Position numbers and translations under genes: made by a program. A DNA stretch of 64,000 nt, taken from positions 124,001 to 188,000 of the IMG/VR virus record IMGVR_UViG_3300043446_004613; one strand, 5' to 3'. Below are positions 53,612 to 63,271 of this stretch, in pieces. The notes below the pieces were generated by a model. It was not told where the DNA came from, ran no database searches, and saw only the letters and a list, made by a program, of their open reading frames with translations. Every line of letters starts with the position of its first letter. The stretch's first letter is position 1.

Positions 53612-55585
53612 ATGGCTGATACCAAAACCAGCAGTTTGTTGCGCTACATGGGACTTACGGGTTCGAGTGGGGCGCACACCGGTTCTCTAGTGCCTCGTGC
53701 CCAAACGCCCGACGCCGATCAACGGCTATGGCAGGAATTTCAAGATGCCGGTCGTGTAAGCGATCCTGAAATCTGGACGAAGTTCAATTCCATGATGAAG
53801 CGTCCGACGACGTTCGACGCGATGCTTCAGATGTGGGATGAGATGAGTCAGTGGGACTTGCTGGCGGCAGCGCTCGTCGAAATTGTCGATGAAGCAACGC
53901 AGGCCGATGCCAACAGCCCCGGCACGTTATGGTACCAGTGCAACGATACGGCTTTTGAGGAAGAACTGAACGACATGCTTGTTCGCCTCGATGTCGAGTC
54001 CTTGATTCAATCTCAGGTCTGGTATATCGCCGCGATGGGTAATCACTTCGAGAAATTGGAGTACGCACCGCACGACGGCATCATCGGGATGTCTTTTGTT
54101 CACCCAATGGAGATGCGTCGCTACTGGCTGGAGCGCAACCGCAAATGTATCGGATTCCGCTGGCTAAACCATAAACCGAACAAAGAAGACGTTTTTGTAC
54201 AGCCCGACAACTCGACGCCGGTTGAACGTGTTTCAATGGCCAGCGGCCAGAACGTCGAAGATTTGTGGTATCCGTGGGATTTTATGCACTTTCGCCGCAT
54301 GTTCCGCATGCGCATGAGTGAGCACGGTGAACCAATTTTTTCTGAAGCTGACGGCATCTATAAGAAGCTGCGCTTAGCTGTTGACCAGATGGTCGTCTGC
54401 CGTGCGCAAGTTCAACCTGATCGTTACGCGGTCAGCATCGACACACAAGAGCAACCGCCGATTGAGCAAATGAAAACGGTGCAGCGCTGGCGTCAGACGC
54501 TACGCAGCAAGCTGGCGTTCGGGCAGGTTGGATCGCCGAACGAGATGAATAGTGCCAGTGACTTTACGGCTTATTACAACGCGCTGGCTTTGGACACCAT
54601 GCTGTACATTGCACAGCCCAAAGGTTTCAACAACGTCATCACCAAGCTGCCCGGTACAGCAGACGTGCCTGATGTATACGACATCGAGCTTTTAACCGAC
54701 CTTTTCTACAGCATCATCGGCATGCCAAAGTCATGGTTCAGTAACCAAGGTGGTGGCGGCGGTGGCGGCGGTGAAACACCGTCCGGTCGTGCGTTGCTCG
54801 CTCAAGACATCCGTTTCCTGCGCAAGATCAAGTCCATCCGCAAGCCGATTACCAACTGTTACCAGTGGCTGGCTTACTTCCACGCCGTACTGAAAGGCAA
54901 GGATGTCAGCAAGCTCGACATCAAGGCCATGATGCCTCAGATCGGCAGTCTGGAAGAGCAGATGAAGATGGAAATGCTCGGTATCCAAGCCGACATCTTG
55001 CAGAAGCTAGGTGACGTCATGGAGCAGTACAAGTTGCCCAAGGAAGCGTGGATTGACGTCGTTTTCAAGCGCTACATGCACCTTCCAGACGAAGTTGTTT
55101 CTGTTTTCATGACGGCGCTGCCCTCTGAAATCGAGCAGCAGGAAGAGAGTCTTGGTCGCAAGGGTGCGCCCAAGATGGATAAACTGATCGAAGAGATCAA
55201 CGCCAAGATCGGCAATAGCCGTGAAGGTCAGGCAGCCATGAACATGCTGCGGGAGGTCTACTACAAAGAGAAGTTGCCGCAGGAACCGAAGACCAAGTGG
55301 ACAAAGGAACGTGTCCTTGAGCGTGCGCCGATGAAAGAGAACGACGTTGTTGTATCAAGCTTTGGTCGCCATCCGTTTGAGCTTAAACGCCGCACAAATT
55401 CTGACGGAAAACTCTCCGAGAGCAAAGTCGGCGAAAATGGTGCTGCCGGGGTCATCCAAGCCAAAGTCGATGCTAAGTCTGCGGGCTGGGACGATGACGG
55501 CGCTACGAAGCCTGTCAACGAGTCACAATCAGGTTCCGGCGAGGGCATGGGCGGCCCGTCCGTGTACCGTAAATGGATCGGCTAA
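53612..55585 (+). CDS. portal protein (T4 gp20-like)
   Basis: AALVEIVDEA, MHFRR, YKKLRLAVDQMVVCR..VQPDRYAVSID, ITKLPG, LAQDIRFLRKI. Confidence 0.9.
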   Translation: MADTKTSSLLRYMGLTGSSGAHTGSLVPRAQTPDADQRLWQEFQDAGRVSDPEIWTKFNSMMKRPTTFDAMLQMWDEMSQWDLLAAALVEIVDEATQADANSPGTLWYQCNDTAFEEELNDMLVRLDVESLIQSQVWYIAAMGNHFEKLEYAPHDGIIGMSFVHPMEMRRYWLERNRKCIGFRWLNHKPNKEDVFVQPDNSTPVERVSMASGQNVEDLWYPWDFMHFRRMFRMRMSEHGEPIFSEADGIYKKLRLAVDQMVVCRAQVQPDRYAVSIDTQEQPPIEQMKTVQRWRQTLRSKLAFGQVGSPNEMNSASDFTAYYNALALDTMLYIAQPKGFNNVITKLPGTADVPDVYDIELLTDLFYSIIGMPKSWFSNQGGGGGGGGETPSGRALLAQDIRFLRKIKSIRKPITNCYQWLAYFHAVLKGKDVSKLDIKAMMPQIGSLEEQMKMEMLGIQADILQKLGDVMEQYKLPKEAWIDVVFKRYMHLPDEVVSVFMTALPSEIEQQEESLGRKGAPKMDKLIEEINAKIGNSREGQAAMNMLREVYYKEKLPQEPKTKWTKERVLERAPMKENDVVVSSFGRHPFELKRRTNSDGKLSESKVGENGAAGVIQAKVDAKSAGWDDDGATKPVNESQSGSGEGMGGPSVYRKWIG

Positions 55586-56346
55586 TGTCACTGCGCATAA
55601 CCAACTTAAACGGGGTAAACCTCATCGAGCAACCACCAGAGACGGTAGCAGTTGCTGCTTATCCGGTAACCGGCGGTGCCGCAAACATCCAGTGTTTGTT
55701 GATTGAGGACTCAGCCCTGCCGGTTGACTACATCACCGGTACGCTTTACTGGGATGATGGCTCATTACCGGTTGTATACAACGGTACCAGCGCAGGCACG
55801 ATTGTCATTGATGCGACCCGTAACCTACAGCCCGGACAATACGTGGCGCGGGTGGAGGCGCACAATTATGCGGTGATACCGGAGGACTGCGGACGACCGC
55901 ACTGGAACACTGTCAGCGTAAACTTTGGATTCTATGTCCAACCGATTGATAAGCAACCGGTCAAGACGCCGTTGATCTACGGCCCGATTCTGCCAAAGGA
56001 CACCGGTTATCCGAACCAAGACCAATGGAACTGGAATCGCGGTGAAGACATTGAGATTCTTGCTTCTTCTGTAAAGATGCTGCTCACCACGCGCAAAGGC
56101 GAGCGGATCATGCAGCCGGGTTACGGTACCAATCTGCACGCCATCTTGTTCGAGCTTCAGACCACCGGTATTGAAACATTGGTTCAGCAAGAGATTGTAG
56201 ACGCGCTGGTGCTTTGGGAGCCTCGTGTGAGTTTACGTTCTATACTTGTGGAACGAACGGCAGAACGTGACGTAACAGTGACTGCCGATTTCGTCAGTAA
56301 ACTGAACCAACGGGATTTTACGATCCCAATGACATTCAACACGTGA
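55585..56346 (+). CDS. baseplate wedge protein with C-terminal gp25 domain
   Basis: SVKMLLTTRKGERIMQPGYGTNL...WEPRV gp25 signature, preceded by a PKD-like domain. Confidence 0.85.
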   Translation: MSLRITNLNGVNLIEQPPETVAVAAYPVTGGAANIQCLLIEDSALPVDYITGTLYWDDGSLPVVYNGTSAGTIVIDATRNLQPGQYVARVEAHNYAVIPEDCGRPHWNTVSVNFGFYVQPIDKQPVKTPLIYGPILPKDTGYPNQDQWNWNRGEDIEILASSVKMLLTTRKGERIMQPGYGTNLHAILFELQTTGIETLVQQEIVDALVLWEPRVSLRSILVERTAERDVTVTADFVSKLNQRDFTIPMTFNT

Positions 56347-56708: not shown

Positions 56709-58043
56709 ATGGCAATAAAACCACTCGATTTACCGGCAGCAGCTGGTGTTGATTATAGCGGCGGCGATGTGCGGCACTTCTCGCAAGGTGACGCTGTTAA
56801 CGTGCCCGGCTTGAGCGCCCCGACACGCAATCTAGCTGAGCGCGACAATCTTATCGGGGAAAAAGTCAACGAGATCATCAGCACGGTGAACAACCGCGAA
56901 CAGTTTGTTCCCCTGCCGGTAATCCGCACCACCGTACCTCCCGGCGAAGAGATCATCGTCACAAATTACCGTATTCCGGCAGGCTATGAATCGCGGGTGC
57001 TTAACGCAGTCATCAGCGCCACGCCAACCAGCAATCTGGCGCAGCTGAACGTCTATTACTCGGATACGTATGGCGGTTCGACGGGTACAGCTGTGGTTAC
57101 AACCACACCTAGCAGCGAATTCAACGGTGACGTCAATTTTTATCAGACCGGCGAATTCATCGTTTCACTGAAAAACACTGGAGCCGCCACGCTCGAACTG
57201 GCCGCCAGCTTGATGCTGACGATGCGTCCGTTGGGTGCTGAAGGTACGCTTCTTGTCGGCACGGTCATCCAAGGCGAACAAGGGCCTCCCGGCCCGAAAG
57301 GTGCGCCCGGCCCGCAGGGGCCTCCCGGTACCGGCGGTGTTGGTTCTCCCGGCATGATCTGGCGCGGCGCTTGGTTGAACGCTACAGGCTACCTGACAAA
57401 CGACGTGGTCAGCTATGACTACAGCGGAACGTACGGGTCTTGGATTTGCCGTAATGCTCATGTGTCATCGCTGGGTGTTAACGATCCGGCTGTTGATCCG
57501 GCCACTTGGAATTTTGTTAGCTACGGTATCTATGCCCAAGGCCCCGCAGGCCCTACAGGCCCTACCGGTGGTGAGCCTGTGTTCAGCCAGCAAGACATCA
57601 GCGGTACGATCTTTACGTCGAATACCTACGTGTCGCGTCCGTACAGTGCCGATTACACGGCAGGTGTCGTATCAGCTGCGAGCACTAAATATCCGATTGC
57701 TGTGCGTGAATCGGTCATCACTAACGCTTCAGGTACGATCGGCTTTGCTTTTCTGGAAGCTTCCTACAAGACATGCTTCAGCGGAAGTCTGTCTATCATA
57801 CTACCGAACAAGGCGTTCAACGGCGCGGCTGCGAACTACAACACGTCCAGCATCAGCCTTCAAGTAGCAGCGGCAGGTACATTCGTGTCCGCAGGTACAG
57901 CCACGAACTCTTCAGTTTCCGGCGGGGTTTATTCCAAGCTGTTTGAGCAGACAACGTACAGTTACGGTTGGGGTATCAAGGTGCTGTCACCGGACGCGCT
58001 TCCAATGTCATTCCTGATTTCTGGCGTTCAGTCCGTTCCTTGA
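56709..58043 (+). CDS. tail fibre-like protein with collagen-like Gly-X-Y repeats
   Basis: GEQGPPGPKGAPGPQGPPG and GPAGPTGPTG; WRGAW...Y..NDVVSY module. Confidence 0.75.
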   Translation: MAIKPLDLPAAAGVDYSGGDVRHFSQGDAVNVPGLSAPTRNLAERDNLIGEKVNEIISTVNNREQFVPLPVIRTTVPPGEEIIVTNYRIPAGYESRVLNAVISATPTSNLAQLNVYYSDTYGGSTGTAVVTTTPSSEFNGDVNFYQTGEFIVSLKNTGAATLELAASLMLTMRPLGAEGTLLVGTVIQGEQGPPGPKGAPGPQGPPGTGGVGSPGMIWRGAWLNATGYLTNDVVSYDYSGTYGSWICRNAHVSSLGVNDPAVDPATWNFVSYGIYAQGPAGPTGPTGGEPVFSQQDISGTIFTSNTYVSRPYSADYTAGVVSAASTKYPIAVRESVITNASGTIGFAFLEASYKTCFSGSLSIILPNKAFNGAAANYNTSSISLQVAAAGTFVSAGTATNSSVSGGVYSKLFEQTTYSYGWGIKVLSPDALPMSFLISGVQSVP

Positions 58044-58368
58044 TGAACTGAAGGTAGCTGGGAAAAGTACAGTCAGGAAAAAGGTCATCCACTGAAATTT
58101 TAAGCTGTTCCGCTATGCGGTTCATCGCTTCATCGTCTTTACCTTCACGGTGTAAGCGAACAAGTTCCAGATCAAAAGCTGCCAGCGCCTGCCAATCGTA
58201 GCTGCTGCGCTCCTCAGCCCTCATGACCAATGTTCCTTGGGTGTGGTGATAAGCTGCAACCAATATCGGCCATTCCCGAAGCACATAAGCAAAAACCCGG
58301 CGCATATCGTCTTTTTCGTCCTGCGTCCACGCGTGAACGTTTTTAACATGCGCACAGATTGTGTTCAT
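57976..58368 (-). CDS. hypothetical protein
   Basis: 130 aa, ATGA coupled to the upstream minus-strand gene. Confidence 0.5.
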   Translation of the reverse strand: MNTICAHVKNVHAWTQDEKDDMRRVFAYVLREWPILVAAYHHTQGTLVMRAEERSSYDWQALAAFDLELVRLHREGKDDEAMNRIAEQLKISVDDLFPDCTFPSYLQFIKERTERQKSGMTLEARPVTAP

Positions 58369-59504
58369 ATCGGAGGCCCCGGCGGATAGTAATAGTTGTC
58401 AGAGTAGACCGGATCATTCGCCAGTGTGATACGCGAAGCCGATTGATTCGTATCAGGGCCGGAAAATATCCAGCTGCCATCCTCGTCGTTACAACGGAAA
58501 TAGCACCAATTTGTATACGTTGATCCAGCCGCGTTCGTAAACTTACCCCGCACCAAAGCTCCGGGTTGACCACTGTTATTGCCTGAAGCTGTCCTGATAA
58601 CAAGTTCGTACGGGTATTCCGCAGTTCCGACCATCTTCGAGTGTGTATTAACCCAGCTTACTTGAGCCGGTACAGCGGTAAATCCTGTGCTGTATACAAG
58701 AGATACCCATTCGCCTGAGCCTAAAAGCGGATCAGTTGGGCCGGTAGGCACGTAGCTGTTGAGTTGCCATTCAAAAATGTACGGAAGGGTACCGCCAGCA
58801 GGCAAATTAACGTAGAAGTAACCAAACTGGGTATCATCACGCCCCATCGAGCAGTAGTTGCAGTTAGTTCCGATCAAAGTCGTTATCCCCGGAAAAGCCG
58901 GACGTACCGGCTGTAGCGGGCCGCCCAGTCTGCGACTGCATGGAAGCAAAAGCTCAACGCCGTCTACGATGATACGCGCAAGGTAATCCGCAACCCGATG
59001 GCCTGCGCTATCGACCGTGACCTGTGGGATCACTTGGTACAAGCCGCCGCTGTGTGTTTCCCAGTGTGCTTCCTGCGTGTGCGGCAGCAGCACCTGCGTA
59101 TTCGTATTGATCAAGTCTTGCTCGTCTTGTGGTGTGAAGTCGGTGACCCACGCAGTACCTCCGGGCGCGGTGGTAATCGTCGGCGTGTTGAGCGTGCGGC
59201 TTATGCCTGTCTCGGGGTCTTTACCCGGAAGTGACGTGGCTTCAATCGGAACAAAGTAGTTGATGCGGTTGTAGTTCAGCACCATGTAGTAGCGACCAAC
59301 GCGATCACCGTGGCTGTCCAGATACATGCTTACGTCGTTACCGGCGGCATCGTAGTAGGGCACCGGCAGGTAGCGCAAGTTGATGCCGTGCGCTTTAGAC
59401 AGCGAAGCGTTAGCGTGCTTGAACAAGTTGTTTACAAGCTCAGTCTGTGCCGCTTTTATCTGCTCAAGTCGCGCACGGGTAACGAGATTTTGTTGTGAAG
59501 CCAT
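58365..59504 (-). CDS. virion/fibre protein with an Ig-like C-terminal region
   Basis: 379 aa, YIFEWQ...GKFTNAAGS Ig-like strands. Confidence 0.55.
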   Translation of the reverse strand: MASQQNLVTRARLEQIKAAQTELVNNLFKHANASLSKAHGINLRYLPVPYYDAAGNDVSMYLDSHGDRVGRYYMVLNYNRINYFVPIEATSLPGKDPETGISRTLNTPTITTAPGGTAWVTDFTPQDEQDLINTNTQVLLPHTQEAHWETHSGGLYQVIPQVTVDSAGHRVADYLARIIVDGVELLLPCSRRLGGPLQPVRPAFPGITTLIGTNCNYCSMGRDDTQFGYFYVNLPAGGTLPYIFEWQLNSYVPTGPTDPLLGSGEWVSLVYSTGFTAVPAQVSWVNTHSKMVGTAEYPYELVIRTASGNNSGQPGALVRGKFTNAAGSTYTNWCYFRCNDEDGSWIFSGPDTNQSASRITLANDPVYSDNYYYPPGPPI

Positions 59505-59507
59505 AGG

Positions 59508-60638
59508 TTATCCAAGGGGCGGCAGAATCACGTTAGTTCCGGCGCTGCTTATACTGGCAGGCCCGGATATGTGGGCCAGCCCGTACATCGCGAAATTGAA
59601 GAATCCTTTCCAGAAACTGTTATGTGCCACGTAGCCATTGACCACGTACACGTCGGTAGGTTCAACATCCAGATTGTAGGTTTCAACATGTCCGCGCACG
59701 TATGACATGCGATCGATCGTTACCGACATCCCATCTTTCCAGAGAAGGTCGCCAACAACCAAGTCCTGAACCTGACGAAAAGCCCAGATGCCAGAGCGAC
59801 AGGTAAGCAGCGGATGTTCGTAAGTAACACGAAGGTCGAGCAACTGAAAGTAACCGGTGAACTGCTGATGCAGGACGCGCTTGACCGTTGATGGTGACGC
59901 ACGCATCACCAGTTCCTTAGCCGACCACGTTTTCCACGCGTCCTCGTTATCTGGATTTAGGCCGTTGATCTTGTATGACATGACCTTGTCGCCGACTTTG
60001 ACATCGCAGATGAGCTTTTGCGTGCCATCAGCCATTGTAACCGGCGTGTCTGGCAAAAAGCAGCCGTCTTTGTGGTATCTGAAACCTGAACTGATCGGCG
60101 ATACCGTCAAATGCGCGGAACTGCTGACCGTTGTTCCGTAGCTGTTCGATACGACTACATCGTAATTTCCACTGTTCGCTGTAGTGCAATACGGTATGAG
60201 GTAAGCGGCTGTATTTCCGTTAGCTACGTTTGTGCCGTTGAAACGCCACTGATAGCTCATTTCCACCGGGCTGATAGCTTTAACCACAAACTCTGCCGGA
60301 TCAGTTGTATACACAGATAGCGGCTCCGGTTGGCGCACAATGTACGGCGTGCTTCCAACCTCGTAGGCTGTCGAACCGGATATGATTGCAGGCAGTGTAA
60401 AGGCAGCATCGCCGGTACCGTCTACGTTGGTACCTGTCAGCTGCACCCGCAGCAGAAAAGCGCCGTTTATGGTATGACCCGTGTCGTGCTCAGCGAAAGT
60501 TGTGCCGTAAAAGCGCACTTGATTATGAGCGCCCCAGTCCCCAGATGCGTGGGCGGCGGCGGAGTTCTCGTAACCGGTAACGGCTTGATAAACGGCAGCT
60601 TCGCTGGCAGACGTCAGTATGTTTACGTTCTGCCGCAT
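59508..60638 (-). CDS. Ig-domain virion protein containing a Hint domain
   Basis: IVRQP...SYQWRFNG...NSGNYDVVVSN I-set-like Ig domain, then a Hint domain and a 36-aa tail. Confidence 0.8.
   Translation of the reverse strand: MRQNVNILTSASEAAVYQAVTGYENSAAAHASGDWGAHNQVRFYGTTFAEHDTGHTINGAFLLRVQLTGTNVDGTGDAAFTLPAIISGSTAYEVGSTPYIVRQPEPLSVYTTDPAEFVVKAISPVEMSYQWRFNGTNVANGNTAAYLIPYCTTANSGNYDVVVSNSYGTTVSSSAHLTVSPISSGFRYHKDGCFLPDTPVTMADGTQKLICDVKVGDKVMSYKINGLNPDNEDAWKTWSAKELVMRASPSTVKRVLHQQFTGYFQLLDLRVTYEHPLLTCRSGIWAFRQVQDLVVGDLLWKDGMSVTIDRMSYVRGHVETYNLDVEPTDVYVVNGYVAHNSFWKGFFNFAMYGLAHISGPASISSAGTNVILPPLG
59619..60062 (-). mobile_element. 148-aa mini-intein / Hint domain without endonuclease
   Basis: starts CFLPDT, block B TYEH (TxxH), block F TYNLDVE, ends HN with +1 Ser. 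Confidence 0.8.
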
Positions 60639-60645
60639 GTTTTAA

Positions 60646-61104
60646 TTATTCGCGTGGCGGCTCAGGCAAAGCAATCTCTTCTTCGCCAGCACCTTCAGGT
60701 GAAGCCAGTTGTTCGGCTGTTTCTGCCTCGCTGGGTTCTTCGCCGGGTTCAGGCAGACCAGCTTCTGGGCCGCCTTCGACCGGAGCTTCCATGCTCTCAG
60801 GCTCTTGTGTCGGCACCTCTTGCGCGTCTTCTGGCGCACCGGCATCTGGCGGCGCATTAGGCGGGAGCGGGATAGCCATATCGCTTTCCGCATCACCTTC
60901 GCCCTCACCTTCACCCTTGCCTTCATCCTCCTCTTCGCCGGGGCCGGGCACGCGTTCCATGTACCACTGCCATTCCGCGTTGAGTTCGTCGGCAACAGGA
61001 TCACTGTGGTTATTGGCCAGCGCTGCTGCGATCGCCTCGATTTGACCCCAGCTAAGTTCTAACTTATAATCGTTATAAGTTTTTTTAATCTTTTCGAGTT
61101 TCAT
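60646..61104 (-). CDS. acidic Glu/Pro-rich hypothetical protein
   Basis: 152 aa with a low-complexity C-terminal half. Confidence 0.6.
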   Translation of the reverse strand: MKLEKIKKTYNDYKLELSWGQIEAIAAALANNHSDPVADELNAEWQWYMERVPGPGEEEDEGKGEGEGEGDAESDMAIPLPPNAPPDAGAPEDAQEVPTQEPESMEAPVEGGPEAGLPEPGEEPSEAETAEQLASPEGAGEEEIALPEPPRE

Positions 61105-61326: not shown

Positions 61327-62463
61327 ATGAATCTGATCACATTCAATGACCCGATCACAATCGCCTTCAAGAAAAGCGCCGGTGGCGTCACTCAAACCTT
61401 TGAAGCCAACCGTCCATACCTGATCGCCAATGCGCAGATTGAGCGCATCATGCGCGATCAACAAGTCAGCGGACGCGCTTACAAAATCAGCCGCGCCGAC
61501 ACACGTATTCCGAACGCGCATAAAGCCGCTTTCAACCGTAATGACAGCGTTCTGATCTACAACGGCAGCGGCGGCTACGGCGACCAGATTTTGACTTGGC
61601 CGGTGGCGCGTTATCTTGCCAATCAGGGTTTGAAAGTCCACGTCTTAACTGACCCCGGCAACAACGTATGCTGGTGGGGATTTGACTTCGTCAAGACGGT
61701 GAACACGATTCCGTTGCTTTGGGAGACTGTTCAGCTATATGACCACTTCATCCACTGGGAGGCGGTGGTTAACATGGACGAGCATCAGGATCAGGAGCAT
61801 CCGATTGACATGATGTTCCGCAAGATAGGCTACGATCCGGCGGATATTTCGGCTGAGGACAAGTGCGTGCGCCCTGTGTTTACGCCAAGTGAACTAGGCA
61901 CCTTGAACAAATACGTGACTTCCGGCAAGCGCGTCGGTCTTTACCAGCTATCCAGTGCCAATCCAGTGCGCTGCCTGCCTGCGGCGGACAGCGTGTTCTT
62001 GATCATGAAGATTGCTGAAGCCTATCCTGACATTCACTGGCTCTGCCTGCATGACGAGTTTGTGCCCAAGGAGTACAAAGAGACACTGGCTGTTGAAATT
62101 ACCAAGCGCGGTTTTACGAATGTGGAAGGTTTTACGGCTCCTAATCTGCGCGAACTGTGGGCGCTGACAGAGCACGTGAATGTGGTTATCAGCCCTGACA
62201 GCATGATGGCCCACATCGCCGGAGCTTTCGGTACTCCCTGCGTAGGTCTTTGGGGGCCGATGTCACCGGAAAGTCGGATGAAATACTACAAGAACCACCA
62301 CCCGATCTACCATCGCGAGTTCTGCCCGCACAGCCCCTGCTTTGTATACAGTAACACATTCCCGAAATATTGTCCGCCTCGCGCAAATCGCAATGTCTGC
62401 GACGTTATGGCCGGTATTTCGCCTTCGGAAGTGATTAGCGCTATCGGTCACATCTGTAGATAG
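61327..62463 (+). CDS. glycosyltransferase family 9 (heptosyltransferase-like)
   Basis: GGYGDQILTWP and VISPDSMMAHIAGAFGTPCVGLWGP signature. Confidence 0.85.
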   Translation: MNLITFNDPITIAFKKSAGGVTQTFEANRPYLIANAQIERIMRDQQVSGRAYKISRADTRIPNAHKAAFNRNDSVLIYNGSGGYGDQILTWPVARYLANQGLKVHVLTDPGNNVCWWGFDFVKTVNTIPLLWETVQLYDHFIHWEAVVNMDEHQDQEHPIDMMFRKIGYDPADISAEDKCVRPVFTPSELGTLNKYVTSGKRVGLYQLSSANPVRCLPAADSVFLIMKIAEAYPDIHWLCLHDEFVPKEYKETLAVEITKRGFTNVEGFTAPNLRELWALTEHVNVVISPDSMMAHIAGAFGTPCVGLWGPMSPESRMKYYKNHHPIYHREFCPHSPCFVYSNTFPKYCPPRANRNVCDVMAGISPSEVISAIGHICR

Positions 62464-62597
62464 TTCATGAACGATGAACCGATAAATACTGAGTATATTG
62501 ATCCCGAGGCTGAACGCTATCGGTCACATCTGTAGATAGTTCATGAACGATGAACCGTTAAATCCTGAGCATCTTGATCCCGAAGCTGAACGCTATC
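62439..62597 (+). repeat. 76-bp tandem duplication bounded by CGCTATC
   Basis: CGCTATC at 62439, 62515 and 62591; first 43 nt identical, 5 substitutions in the remainder. Confidence 0.92.
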
Positions 62598-63271
62598 TCA
62601 GCCAGCTTCCGCCCGCGCCGCCAGACGATACGCTTCAAGGTGTCGTTTCCGCGCTGCAACCGTTGGGCATTACAGAGCTTAAGGTGCAATATTCCGGCTA
62701 TGGTGACAGTGGAGACATCGACTACATCAGCATAGAGCCGTCTGACATCGTTTTGCCGGATAAGTTCGATGAAGTGGTTAAAGACGTTGCGTGGAAAACA
62801 GCCTACAATCTACACTCCGGATTTGAGAATAACGAAGGTGGTCAAGGTCATGTAACTTTTGATTTTAACGATAGAACGGTCACGGTATATCACACAGACA
62901 ATGTTGAGTTCGACGAGGAACTGAACATGCCGAATTTACCTTTGCCGGAAGAATTTCGGGAATACACTGGGGATGACGGATCGTGCTACATTAGCTTCTA
63001 CATGGGCAGCGATGGTGATGTCTACTTCAATGATAAAACTGAAGGCATCGATGAAGATGCAAACAATGTTGGGGCTATTTCAACGCTTGTTTTTGATAAC
63101 GCAGACTTAGGGGAAAATGATTCCTACTCTGGAGCAGTGCGCTGGCAAAATGGCTCAGACACCTGCTCTATCAGAGGCACGAAATCATGGACAGCGACTG
63201 ACGAGGATAATGCCTCTGTAAACACGTATACGTTCGATGAAATTTTAGCGAATGAGCAGCTAGGTACCTAA
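62543..63271 (+). CDS. acidic DUF6878-like protein
   Basis: LGITELKVQYSGYGDSG and GFENNEGGQG motifs. Confidence 0.6.
   Translation: MNDEPLNPEHLDPEAERYLSQLPPAPPDDTLQGVVSALQPLGITELKVQYSGYGDSGDIDYISIEPSDIVLPDKFDEVVKDVAWKTAYNLHSGFENNEGGQGHVTFDFNDRTVTVYHTDNVEFDEELNMPNLPLPEEFREYTGDDGSCYISFYMGSDGDVYFNDKTEGIDEDANNVGAISTLVFDNADLGENDSYSGAVRWQNGSDTCSIRGTKSWTATDEDNASVNTYTFDEILANEQLGT

What the first reader, a model, noticed from the sequence alone, without database searches (positions are those of the whole stretch)
58460..60062. Mini-intein in an Ig-domain virion protein, with a possible empty site in the neighbouring gene
All splicing residues are present (C1, TxxH, HN, +1 Ser) and there is no endonuclease. 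It sits just after the last Ig strand, at HKDG^SFW, with only 36 aa beyond. The adjacent gene has NDEDG-SWI after its own last Ig-like strand (about 58469-58490), resembling the spliced junction. Known: inteins favour conserved enzyme sites, while Hint domains on surface proteins tend to cleave or ligate. Inference: either a true intein in an unusual structural host, or an autoprocessing device that releases the aromatic tail peptide or couples the Ig domain to another molecule through the thioester.
Basis: partly seen in the sequence, partly recalled or inferred. Interest (0 to 1): 0.62.

Follow-up and report, generated by a model that had tools for sequence, protein, structure and literature searches.

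The report
Resident intein-like domain on phage decoration protein
A jumbo-phage Ig-domain virion protein carries a 148-residue self-processing Hint domain that is an inherited part of the protein, not a mobile intein, and belongs to a large, apparently undescribed group of phage fibre and decoration proteins that end in "Hint plus a short lysine-bearing tail".

Summary
The Hint domain is real. It is Cys193 to Asn340 of the 376-aa gene at 59508-60638 (-), that is 59619-60062, with TxxH, terminal His-Asn, Ser+1, no endonuclease and a 36-aa tail.

It is not a typical intein:
- About 45 orthologues in the same gene order keep it. It is as conserved as the rest of the protein and diverges in step with it.
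- The +1 residue is Asn in 31 of 38 orthologues and Ser in only 4.
- A lysine at +4 to +8 is always present.

A search of 1.8 billion representatives with the Hint alone found 270 clusters at E<=1e-10. Among the best 150, 93 proteins carry the Hint at the extreme C-terminus. All 93 tails contain Lys, and only 7% of copies have Ser, Thr or Cys at +1. Where annotatable, the N-terminal parts are tail-fibre, collagen, Ig, fn3 or BACON modules.

The nearest solved structures are bacterial intein-like (BIL) domains. They include Tetrahymena BIL2, which makes a Lys isopeptide.

The suggested empty site in the neighbouring gene is not supported: the two proteins are not detectably homologous. Real Hint-free orthologues do exist, one with the tail fused at the predicted junction and three that end just after the Ig domain.

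Best reading: a type-A-BIL-like autoprocessing module. Whether it ligates, cleaves or cross-links is untested.

The parts
59508..60638 (-). Gene A (P0001, 376 aa): Hoc-like Ig-domain virion protein carrying the Hint module
   Evidence: ORF and translation. About 45 orthologues in the same gene order. PHROG hits to tail and Hoc-like decoration families over the Ig part.
60354..60638 (-). N-terminal region (residues 1-95): long helix plus small beta domain, presumed virion-binding part
   Evidence: AF2 secondary structure, low to medium confidence. The role is inferred by analogy with Sf14 gp20, whose N-terminus binds the capsid (PMC11821841). It is not shown.
60099..60347 (-). Ig I-set domain (residues 98-180)
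   Evidence: Pfam Ig_3 and I-set, below cut-off for this copy. The family profile matches the Ig repeats of Sf14 gp20 (PDB 9C2D chain S) at E 5e-51. pLDDT is about 87-96.
60063..60098 (-). Linker (residues 181-192) ending in Gly192, the -1 residue that would carry the thioester
   Evidence: Gly at -1 in 38 of 38 orthologues.
59619..60062 (-). Hint (BIL-like) domain, Cys193 to Asn340, 148 aa, no endonuclease
   Evidence: Weak Pfam and NCBIfam Hint hits. pLDDT above 90. The family profile matches BIL2 (6TMM, 6Y75) at about 2e-10. Foldseek top hits are BIL2 and C. thermocellum BIL 2LWY. C193, T272, H275, D329, H339 and N340 are identical in at least 95% of the family; H339 is Pro in one member, P0030.
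59511..59618 (-). C-terminal tail (residues 341-376): Ser341 at +1, aromatic pair, Lys344 at +4, then a hydrophobic stretch
   Evidence: Lys at +4 in 37 of 38 orthologues and at +8 in one. Tail predicted disordered. The tail is homologous to the tail of the Hint-free orthologue P0038.
58365..59504 (-). Gene B (P0002, 379 aa): conserved neighbour with no known family. Its beta-sandwich ends at about residue 338 and a disordered tail follows.
   Evidence: Always downstream of gene A in relatives.
58467..58490 (-).
   Evidence: Present and conserved in close homologues of gene B. It marks a domain boundary. There is no homology to gene A.
60646..61104 (-). Upstream gene of the same four-gene minus-strand block: 152-aa acidic protein
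   Evidence: The same position is occupied by 154-186-aa genes in L001, L002, L004, L012 and L013.
57976..58368 (-). Last gene of the block (130 aa, no family hit); its start abuts the stop of gene B

Best explanation
Gene A encodes a Hoc-like decoration or fibre protein of a jumbo myovirus (N-terminal anchor plus one Ig domain). Its C-terminus carries a resident, vertically inherited Hint domain that works like a type-A bacterial intein-like (BIL) domain.

Proposed mechanism:
1. Cys193 attacks the Gly192 carbonyl (N-S acyl shift, helped by T272 and H275), giving a thioester at the end of the Ig domain.
2. Asn340, helped by His339, cyclises and cuts the Hint from the tail.
3. The thioester is resolved by a nucleophile of the short Lys-bearing tail. 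Candidates are Ser341 by the canonical route in this copy, or an amine as the +1-independent family route: the freed alpha-amine as in type-A BILs, or the Lys344 epsilon-amine as in Tetrahymena BIL2.

The net result is that the 148-aa Hint excises itself and the Ig domain ends up capped by, or joined to, the tail.

Shown: the anatomy, conservation of the catalytic residues, the universal tail lysine, vertical inheritance, the clade-wide C-terminal architecture, the fold relationship to BIL domains, and Hint-free orthologues. Inferred: that the domain is active, and which nucleophile resolves the thioester.

My split for the outcome: ligation to the own tail about 0.4, cleavage only about 0.25, cross-link to another protein about 0.15.
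For: Catalytic set: C1, TxxH, a block-F Asp and the terminal Asn are invariant in 38 orthologues, and the penultimate His is kept in 37 (Pro in P0030). Gly is at -1 in 38 of 38.

Distribution in the wider clade: 202 of 204 complete copies end in His-Asn, so C-terminal cleavage is under selection. Ser, Thr or Cys at +1 occurs in only 14 of 204.

Tail lysine: all 93 single-copy C-terminal relatives have a Lys in the tail. For tails of 12 aa or less it is 69 of 69, against 10 expected from composition. The position is flexible, +1 to +8. In the gene family it is at +4 in 37 of 38.

Nearest solved relatives: BIL2 of the Tetrahymena BUBL locus (family profile about 2e-10; Foldseek 9e-10). BIL2 uses a lysine of its C-terminal flank to form an isopeptide (PMC8616854, section 2.4). 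Next is the C. thermocellum BIL, 2LWY. Type-A BILs splice without a +1 nucleophile by aminolysis, though cleavage dominates (PMC4031507). A single +1 mutation turns BILs into efficient splicers (PMC7664689), which bears on this copy's Ser341.

Hint-free orthologue: P0038, in the same gene order, has the tail fused to the Ig domain within 2-3 residues of the predicted junction.

Inheritance: the Hint is as conserved as the flanks (63% against 67% and 56% mean pairwise identity) and diverges with them (Spearman 0.72). It shows no compositional anomaly. No other Hint or intein was found in the 211-kb genome.
Against: There is no experimental evidence of any processing. Three orthologues end right after the Ig domain with neither Hint nor tail, so the tail-joined product is not essential; this fits a cleavage-only role at least as well. 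In characterised type-A BILs cleavage products dominate (PMC4031507, PMC7664689). The tail lysine could serve catalysis or recognition rather than act as the nucleophile. The AF2 model gives no reliable position for Lys344 (pLDDT below 50). Pfam and NCBIfam Hint models score below their curated cut-offs for this copy, so subfamily assignment rests on structure and profile matches.
Confidence: 0.4

Rival explanations
1. Cleavage-only maturation device. The Hint cuts at Gly192/Cys193 by thioester hydrolysis and at Asn340. The mature virion protein is the 192-aa anchor-plus-Ig fragment. The Hint and tail act only before cleavage, for example in folding, assembly or timing, and are then discarded, much like the self-cleaving C-terminal chaperone domains of phage tail spikes.
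For: Three orthologues in the same gene order (179-181 aa) stop just after the last Ig strand, with no Hint and no tail. They arose at separate places in the tree, so the short product is viable. A possible out-of-frame tail remnant follows one of them. BIL domains without a +1 nucleophile give mainly cleaved products (PMC4031507, PMC7664689). Deep-branching orthologues have tails of only 4-7 aa.
Against: This reading does not explain why the terminal His-Asn (202 of 204 copies) and a tail lysine (93 of 93) are kept when only a 4-7-aa peptide would be released. It also does not explain why the long tail is conserved in the crown group, or why it was kept fused in the Hint-free P0038.
Confidence: 0.25
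2. Cross-linking device. The Gly192 thioester is attacked by a lysine, or another nucleophile, of a different virion protein or ligand. This attaches the Ig domain covalently, as BIL2 does when it conjugates a ubiquitin-like domain to other proteins. The tail lysine is a fallback acceptor.
For: BIL2, the nearest solved relative, conjugates its N-terminal flank to several substrates through Lys isopeptides without ATP (PMC8616854). Gly is invariant at -1. The module is attached to fibre, adhesin and decoration proteins.
Against: No acceptor has been identified. By analogy with Sf14 gp20 the anchor is N-terminal, so the thioester would lie at the distal end, away from the virion (PMC11821841). 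Hint-free orthologues are viable.
Confidence: 0.15
3. Ordinary selfish class-1 mini-intein. It once invaded the gene, lost its endonuclease, and simply splices through Ser341 to restore a 228-aa host protein.
For: The window's copy has every class-1 residue: C1, TxxH, block-F Asp, His-Asn, Ser+1. One Hint-free orthologue has the flanks joined at the same point. Mini-inteins (DnaB, gp41-1) are the next fold matches after the BILs. Vibrio phage helicase genes hold related Hints.
Against: The +1 residue is Asn, Val, Pro, Leu, Gly or Ile in most orthologues, and Ser in only 4 of 38, scattered on the tree. The Hint is ancestral to the family, and the Hint-free forms are nested inside it, so they are secondary losses. 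It is as conserved as the host protein and co-diverges with it. The insertion point is a linker after the last domain, not a conserved functional site. The wider clade is C-terminal, with 4-12-aa tails.
Confidence: 0.12
4. Catalytically dead Hint kept as a structural or binding domain at the tip of the decoration protein.
For: No processing has been shown. Pfam scores are below cut-off.
Against: C1, TxxH and the terminal Asn are invariant in 38 orthologues, and 202 of 204 copies in the wider clade end in His-Asn. That pattern is what selection on chemistry produces, not selection on a scaffold.
Confidence: 0.05

Closest known systems
Type-A bacterial intein-like (BIL) domains (Amitai et al. 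2003; Dassa et al. 2004; C. thermocellum BIL, PDB 2LWY)
   Same: Hint fold. Cys at position 1. Terminal His-Asn. The +1 residue is usually not a nucleophile. The domain sits in variable, surface-type proteins rather than in conserved enzyme sites. It is fixed rather than mobile. 2LWY is among the top fold matches. The mechanism (thioester, Asn cyclisation, aminolysis or cleavage) is described in PMC4031507.
   Different: Here the host is a phage virion protein. The domain lies at the extreme C-terminus with a 4-36-aa tail that always contains Lys. The Pfam PT-HINT model scores below its cut-off for this copy (16 against 27.7 bits). Some natural copies, including this one, carry Ser at +1.
BIL2 domain of the Tetrahymena thermophila BUBL1 polyubiquitin-like locus (PDB 6TMM, 6Y75)
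   Same: Best sequence-profile match (about 2e-10) and best fold match (9e-10, TM about 0.76 on the target) in the PDB. Gly precedes Cys1. A lysine in the C-terminal flank is the nucleophile there and gives an isopeptide (PMC8616854). Here a flank lysine is universal.
   Different: BIL2 is flanked by ubiquitin-like domains in a eukaryote. Here the flanks are an Ig domain and a short peptide in a phage. Identity is only about 21%. No zinc-site or isopeptide evidence exists here.
Class-1 mini-inteins (for example Ssp DnaB, gp41-1)
   Same: Same fold and the same catalytic blocks A, B, F and G. The window's copy has Ser+1, and a Hint-free orthologue has joined flanks.
   Different: Not sporadic, not in a conserved site, no endonuclease and no trace of one. 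The +1 nucleophile is absent from most orthologues and from 93% of the wider clade.
Hedgehog (Hog) C-terminal autoprocessing domains
   Same: A C-terminal Hint that activates the C-terminus of an N-terminal 'cargo' domain as a thioester. 6TYY is among the fold matches.
   Different: Hog domains lack the terminal His-Asn and have a sterol-recognition region. Here His-Asn is almost universal (202 of 204 copies in the wider clade, 37 of 38 orthologues), and what follows is a short Lys tail.
Hoc-like Ig decoration proteins (T4 Hoc, Sf14 gp20, T5 pb10)
   Same: The Ig domain of the family matches the Ig repeats of Sf14 gp20 (9C2D chain S) at E 5e-51. PHROG Hoc-like and tail-protein hits. The layout of an N-terminal anchor followed by Ig domains is as in Sf14 gp20 (PMC11821841).
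   Different: None of the characterised Hoc-like proteins is reported to carry a Hint domain. The location of gene A's product on the virion is unknown.
Erwinia and Dickeya jumbo-phage 'virion structural protein' (phrog_38766; for example Dickeya phage AD1 gp108) and Phage NCTB 'large intein domain protein'
   Same: Same module order: fibre or collagen part, beta-sandwich, Gly|Cys-Hint-His-Asn, then a 7-10-aa tail with Lys. 44 of 73 clade members match phrog_38766.
   Different: Different N-terminal parts (collagen repeats, very long fibres). Only about 25-30% identity in the Hint. These are database annotations with no functional study that I could find.

Membership tests
Intein (class 1, protein-splicing element) | Hint splicing fold with blocks A, B, F and G; N-terminal Cys or Ser; C-terminal Asn, usually His-Asn | tested here: met
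   C193, T272-x-x-H275, D329 and H339-N340. Hint fold at pLDDT above 90 with intein and BIL fold matches.
Intein (class 1, protein-splicing element) | Cys, Ser or Thr at +1 of the C-extein, conserved because splicing needs it | tested here: not met
   The window's copy has Ser341. Across orthologues, however, +1 is Asn 31, Ser 4, Val 2, Pro 1. Added orthologues show Leu, Gly, Ile and Pro. In the wider clade Ser, Thr or Cys occurs in 14 of 204 copies.
Intein (class 1, protein-splicing element) | Sporadic presence or absence among close homologues, insertion in a conserved site, and mobility (an endonuclease or its remnant) | tested here: not met
   The Hint is present in nearly all orthologues and in every deep branch. 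Hint-free forms are nested inside, so they are secondary losses. The Hint co-diverges with the host protein. The site is a linker after the last domain. The domain is 148 aa with no endonuclease.
Intein (class 1, protein-splicing element) | Demonstrated excision with ligation of the flanks | not testable with these tools
   Needs expression and mass spectrometry.
Type-A BIL domain | Hint domain with Cys1 and C-terminal His-Asn but no conserved +1 nucleophile | tested here: met
   The definition is taken from PMC4031507 and PMC7765530.
Type-A BIL domain | Found in variable regions of non-conserved, surface or secreted-type proteins, and fixed rather than mobile | tested here: met
   Host proteins in the clade are fibre, collagen, Ig, fn3, BACON and PASTA modules with N-terminal parts of 15 to 1466 aa. 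Inheritance is vertical.
Type-A BIL domain | Sequence membership, meaning the A-type motif set. I take the Pfam PT-HINT model as the nearest curated proxy; that equivalence is from memory and was not checked. | tested here: inconclusive
   PT-HINT scores 16.1 bits against a cut-off of 27.7 for this copy. 35 of 73 clade members match PT-HINT at E<=1e-3, and 32 also match Intein_splicing. The fold match to 2LWY ranks 6th.
BUBL-type BIL (isopeptide-forming) | Closest sequence and structure relationship | tested here: met
   6TMM and 6Y75 are the best Hint hits by profile (about 2e-10) and by Foldseek (9e-10).
BUBL-type BIL (isopeptide-forming) | Flanked by ubiquitin-like domains | tested here: not met
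   The flanks are an Ig domain and a short peptide.
BUBL-type BIL (isopeptide-forming) | A lysine of the C-terminal flank acts as nucleophile and gives an isopeptide | not testable with these tools
   A flank lysine is universally present. Its role is not shown.
Hedgehog (Hog) autoprocessing domain | C-terminal Hint without a terminal Asn, followed by a sterol-recognition region | tested here: not met
   His-Asn is conserved. The tail is 4-36 aa.
Phage tail-spike intramolecular chaperone (Peptidase S74 type) | Sequence match to the self-cleaving C-terminal chaperone domain | tested here: not met
   No such Pfam or PHROG hit for gene A.

The most novel reading that the evidence does not exclude
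Phages widely use a C-terminal 'Hint plus lysine mini-tail' module as an ATP-independent protein-ligation device. The thioester formed at the end of a fibre or decoration protein would be passed to a lysine epsilon-amine, either of its own tail or of another virion or host-surface protein, giving isopeptide-capped or cross-linked virion proteins. This is the chemistry known so far only from the ciliate BUBL locus. The tandem poly-Hint proteins with His-Asn|Lys-Gly(n)|Cys linkers would be multi-shot versions of the same device.
Probability: 0.25. Interest if true: 0.85.

Novelty: new variant of a known kind. Interest (0 to 1): 0.6.

Why it matters
Inteins are usually treated as selfish elements in replication enzymes. 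Hint domains with a host function are known mainly from Hedgehog, bacterial toxins and a ciliate ubiquitin locus.

This window points to a large, uncharacterised clade: 270 clusters at E<=1e-10. In it a Hint domain with a complete cleavage and ligation toolkit, plus an always-present tail lysine, is a standing part of phage fibre and decoration proteins.

If the module is active, it would be a new post-translational maturation or cross-linking step in virion assembly. It would also be a natural source of small +1-independent ligation domains.

The gene family also offers natural variants for a direct test of what each part does: Asn against Ser at +1, 4-aa against 36-aa tails, Hint deleted with or without the tail.

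Tried and rejected
- Neighbour gene as an 'empty site'. BLASTP and profile-profile comparison show no homology. The neighbour's family (43 members) never carries a Hint there. Rejected as homology; only an architectural parallel remains, a beta-sandwich end followed by a flexible tail.
- Other inteins or Hint copies in the 211-kb phage record. None was found with the Hint itself, Intein_splicing or PT-HINT.
- Recent invasion. GC and GC3 of the Hint segment do not differ from the flanks.
- Curated family assignment. Every Pfam and NCBIfam Hint or intein model is below its cut-off for this copy, so no subfamily label can be taken from them.
- Literature. Seven searches and several papers gave background on BIL and BUBL domains and on Hoc-like proteins. 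None described Hint modules on phage fibre or decoration proteins. The Dickeya AD1 paper holds no proteomic data on its homologue. Dassa 2004 and Chiarini 2021 are not held.
- Position of Lys344 relative to the active site.
- Not used, because no claim needed them: reads tools, RNA tools and complex prediction.
- Joined (Hint-deleted) sequences. They were built only inside a local script to align natural phage proteins. Searches used the whole gene or the Hint segment by reference.
Full report
**Setting.** The window is part of a 211,113-bp virus record estimated 93% complete. It encodes a T4-type portal (53612-55585), a gp25-like baseplate wedge protein (55573-56346) and a collagen-like fibre protein (56709-58043), so this is a jumbo myovirus. 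The finding lies in a tightly packed minus-strand block of four genes:
- a 152-aa acidic protein (60646-61104);
- gene A (59508-60638, 376 aa, P0001);
- gene B (58365-59504, 379 aa, P0002);
- a 130-aa protein (57976-58368).

The same block, between a GT9-type glycosyltransferase gene and the fibre, gp25 and portal genes, recurs in every related contig I fetched.

**The observation.**
- Residues 98-180 form an Ig I-set domain.
- A 12-residue linker ends in Gly192.
- Cys193 to Asn340 (59619-60062) is a 148-residue Hint domain. Block B is T272-x-x-H275, a block-F Asp is at 329, and the terminal pair is His339-Asn340.
- Ser341 is at +1 and the tail is 36 residues.
- There is no room for an endonuclease.

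An AF2 model built on 38 orthologues gives pLDDT above 90 for the Ig and Hint domains and below 50 for the tail. In the AF2 model of gene B (mean pLDDT 63) it sits at the end of the last strand of a beta-sandwich, followed by a disordered tail. That model has weak Ig-like fold matches.

**The neighbour is not an empty site.** Genes A and B share no detectable homology: BLASTP E>6 and profile-profile probability 5%. The 43 homologues of gene B never carry a Hint. In some of them a different module of about 100 aa follows the same D-x-x-G-S-W point. So that motif marks a domain boundary and nothing more. The four-residue match D-G-S-aromatic is rare, occurring once in 35.7 thousand residues of long frames. 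It is still only four residues found by eye.

**The Hint is resident, not mobile.** The word search found 38 full-length orthologues at 32-61% identity, and all of them carry the Hint.
- Cys1, TxxH, a block-F Asp, the terminal Asn and Gly at -1 are invariant. The penultimate His is kept in 37 of 38 (Pro in P0030).
- The Hint is 147-149 residues long in every copy.
- Its mean pairwise identity (63%) matches that of the flanks (67% and 56%), and its divergence tracks theirs (Spearman 0.72).
- GC and GC3 are unremarkable.
- No other Hint or intein is present in the genome.

The +1 residue is not conserved: Asn 31, Ser 4 (including this copy), Val 2, Pro 1. Further orthologues show Leu, Gly, Ile and Pro. 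The four Ser+1 copies are scattered on the tree. A family that depended on canonical splicing could not tolerate this. By contrast, a lysine follows at +4 in 37 of 38 copies and at +8 in the other. One orthologue ends exactly at that lysine.

**Hint-free orthologues exist.**
- P0038 (236 aa, L001 2987-3697) sits in the same gene order. Its tail is fused directly to the linker after the Ig domain. It aligns with the Hint-deleted forms of the others within 2-3 residues of the predicted junction.
- Three further orthologues of 179-181 aa (P0262, P0264, P0267) stop right after the last Ig strand and have neither Hint nor tail.
- Behind one of them, the 144-nt spacer reads a possible tail remnant in another frame. 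This is tentative.

On a tree of the N-terminal parts, every deep branch has the Hint with a 4-7-residue lysine tail. The 20-36-residue tail appears at the base of a crown group of 40 sequences. The four Hint-free forms are nested separately inside that crown group. So 'Hint plus mini-tail' is ancestral, the long tail is a later addition, and the Hint was lost three or four times.

**The wider clade.** I searched 1.84 billion cluster representatives with the Hint segment alone. This gave 1341 clusters at E<=1e-3 and 270 at E<=1e-10. I analysed the best 150 with an HMM of the family's Hint:
- 202 of 204 complete copies end in His-Asn.
- The +1 residue is Lys 86, Ala 24, Val 21, Ile 18. Ser, Thr and Cys together make 14 (7%).
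- 93 proteins have one Hint at the extreme C-terminus, and 69 of these have tails of 12 residues or fewer.
- Every one of the 93 tails contains a lysine. For the short tails that is 69 of 69, against 10 expected from composition. The first Lys is mostly at +4 to +6.
- 40 proteins are tandem poly-Hint arrays with linkers His-Asn|Lys-Gly(1-5)|Cys.

N-terminal parts range from 15 to 1466 residues. Where they can be annotated they are collagen repeats, Ig, fn3, BACON and PASTA domains, tail-collar fibre, Gp38 and Gp53-like fibre parts. PHROG families include tail fibre, tail protein and Hoc-like decoration, and 44 of 73 members match the jumbo-phage 'virion structural protein' phrog_38766.

Named examples show the same order. 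Dickeya phage AD1 gp108 has collagen repeats, a beta-sandwich, Gly|Cys-Hint-His-Asn|Thr and a 10-residue Lys-containing tail. Phage NCTB BN7874_132 has Gly6|Cys ... His-Asn|Ala and a 7-residue tail with Lys. BFVD holds many phage models with a beta-sandwich followed by a Hint, auto-named 'Hint domain containing protein' or 'Fibronectin type III'.

**What it resembles.** In the PDB the Hint's best matches by profile and by fold are the BIL2 domain of the Tetrahymena BUBL1 locus (about 2e-10; 9e-10) and the C. thermocellum BIL domain 2LWY. Mini-inteins and a Hedgehog domain come next.
- Type-A BILs keep Cys1 and His-Asn and lack a +1 nucleophile. They mostly cleave but can splice, when the freed amino group of the C-flank attacks the thioester (PMC4031507).
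- A single +1 change turns BILs into efficient splicers (PMC7664689).
- BIL2 places a lysine of its C-terminal flank at the N-terminal junction and makes an isopeptide. It can also pass its N-flank to other proteins (PMC8616854, section 2.4).

The Ig domain is closest to the repeats of Sf14 gp20, a Hoc-like capsid decoration protein whose N-terminus binds the capsid (PMC11821841). By that analogy the Hint would sit at the outward end. This is an inference.

**Mechanism.** What is shown is a complete, conserved set of residues for thioester formation at Gly192-Cys193 and for Asn340 cyclisation, plus a universally present, positionally flexible lysine in the flank, all in a domain that is part of the protein's heritage.

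From this I infer that the domain is active and excises itself. Keeping His-Asn when only a 4-7-residue peptide lies beyond it makes little sense for a pure N-terminal cleavage device. It makes sense if Asn cyclisation resolves or enables a ligation onto that peptide. The flexible position of the lysine suits a substrate nucleophile better than a fixed catalytic residue.

My best single reading (0.4) is therefore self-excision with rejoining or capping onto the tail. In this particular copy that may go through Ser341 by the canonical route. In the family at large it would go through an amine. Rivals:
- Cleavage-only (0.25). It is well supported by the three orthologues that simply end after the Ig domain, and by what characterised BILs mostly do.
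- Cross-linking to another protein (0.15).
- A plain selfish mini-intein (0.12).
- A dead domain (0.05).

None of these can be separated without an experiment.

**Novelty.** Hint, BIL and intein chemistry is known, and databases already flag 'Hint' in some phage proteins. In seven literature searches I did not find any account of a fixed C-terminal Hint module on phage fibre or decoration proteins, of its invariable tail lysine, or of the tandem arrays. I rate it a new variant of a known kind.

- No other genetic code was used.
- No reads tools were used.
- The Hint-deleted joined forms were made only inside a local alignment script and were never sent to a search or fold tool.

Noticed in passing
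relatives P0113, P0114 and others; L011 5335-9192: 40 of the 150 best relatives of the window's Hint are tandem poly-Hint proteins with up to 9 matched stretches. The linkers are His-Asn|Lys-Gly(1-5)|Cys, so almost nothing lies between the domains but a lysine and glycines.
   Followed up: partly
window 61327-62463 (+); L002, L004, L012, L013, L011: A GT9 (heptosyltransferase-like) glycosyltransferase gene sits beside the Ig-Hint block in all related contigs. A GT9+GT2 gene also lies three genes from the poly-Hint gene in L011. A link to the Hint chemistry is pure speculation.
   Followed up: no
window 60522-60551 (gene A residues 30-38) and 59388-59417 (gene B residues 30-39): Genes A and B both begin with a long predicted helix carrying two histidines 8-9 residues apart, starting at residue 30 in each. 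In A they are His30 and His38, identical in at least 90% of the family; in B, His30 and His39, invariant. This may be a shared attachment motif even though the proteins have no detectable homology.
   Followed up: no
L013 4541-4684: Behind the 179-aa Hint-free, tail-free orthologue, the 144-nt spacer reads ..SWLWWITP.. in another frame. This resembles the family tail consensus ..SIWRWITPETAI.. and may be a deletion scar.
   Followed up: partly
gene B homologues P0102-P0109 (alignment A2): In some homologues of gene B the Pro-rich tail after the D-x-x-G-S-W point is replaced by a different module of about 100 aa, with a conserved W-P-D-C motif in several. The C-terminus is therefore modular.
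   Followed up: no
window 60646-61104 (-): The first gene of the block encodes a very acidic, Glu-, Pro- and Gly-rich 152-aa protein with no family hit. Genes of 154-186 aa occupy the same position in relatives.
   Followed up: no
window 56709-58043 (+): A 444-aa protein with a collagen-like Gly-X-Y stretch and a weak tail-fibre PHROG hit, convergent with the Ig-Hint block.
   Followed up: no
window 62543-63271 (+): A 242-aa acidic protein with a DUF6878 domain; function unknown.
   Followed up: no
phage records OQ622096.1, MW824434.1, OZ196347.1 and others: Vibrio phage helicase or P-loop NTPase genes hold Hint segments 28-30% identical to the window's. These are probably genuine inteins, so this Hint clade and phage mini-inteins are not far apart.
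   Followed up: no
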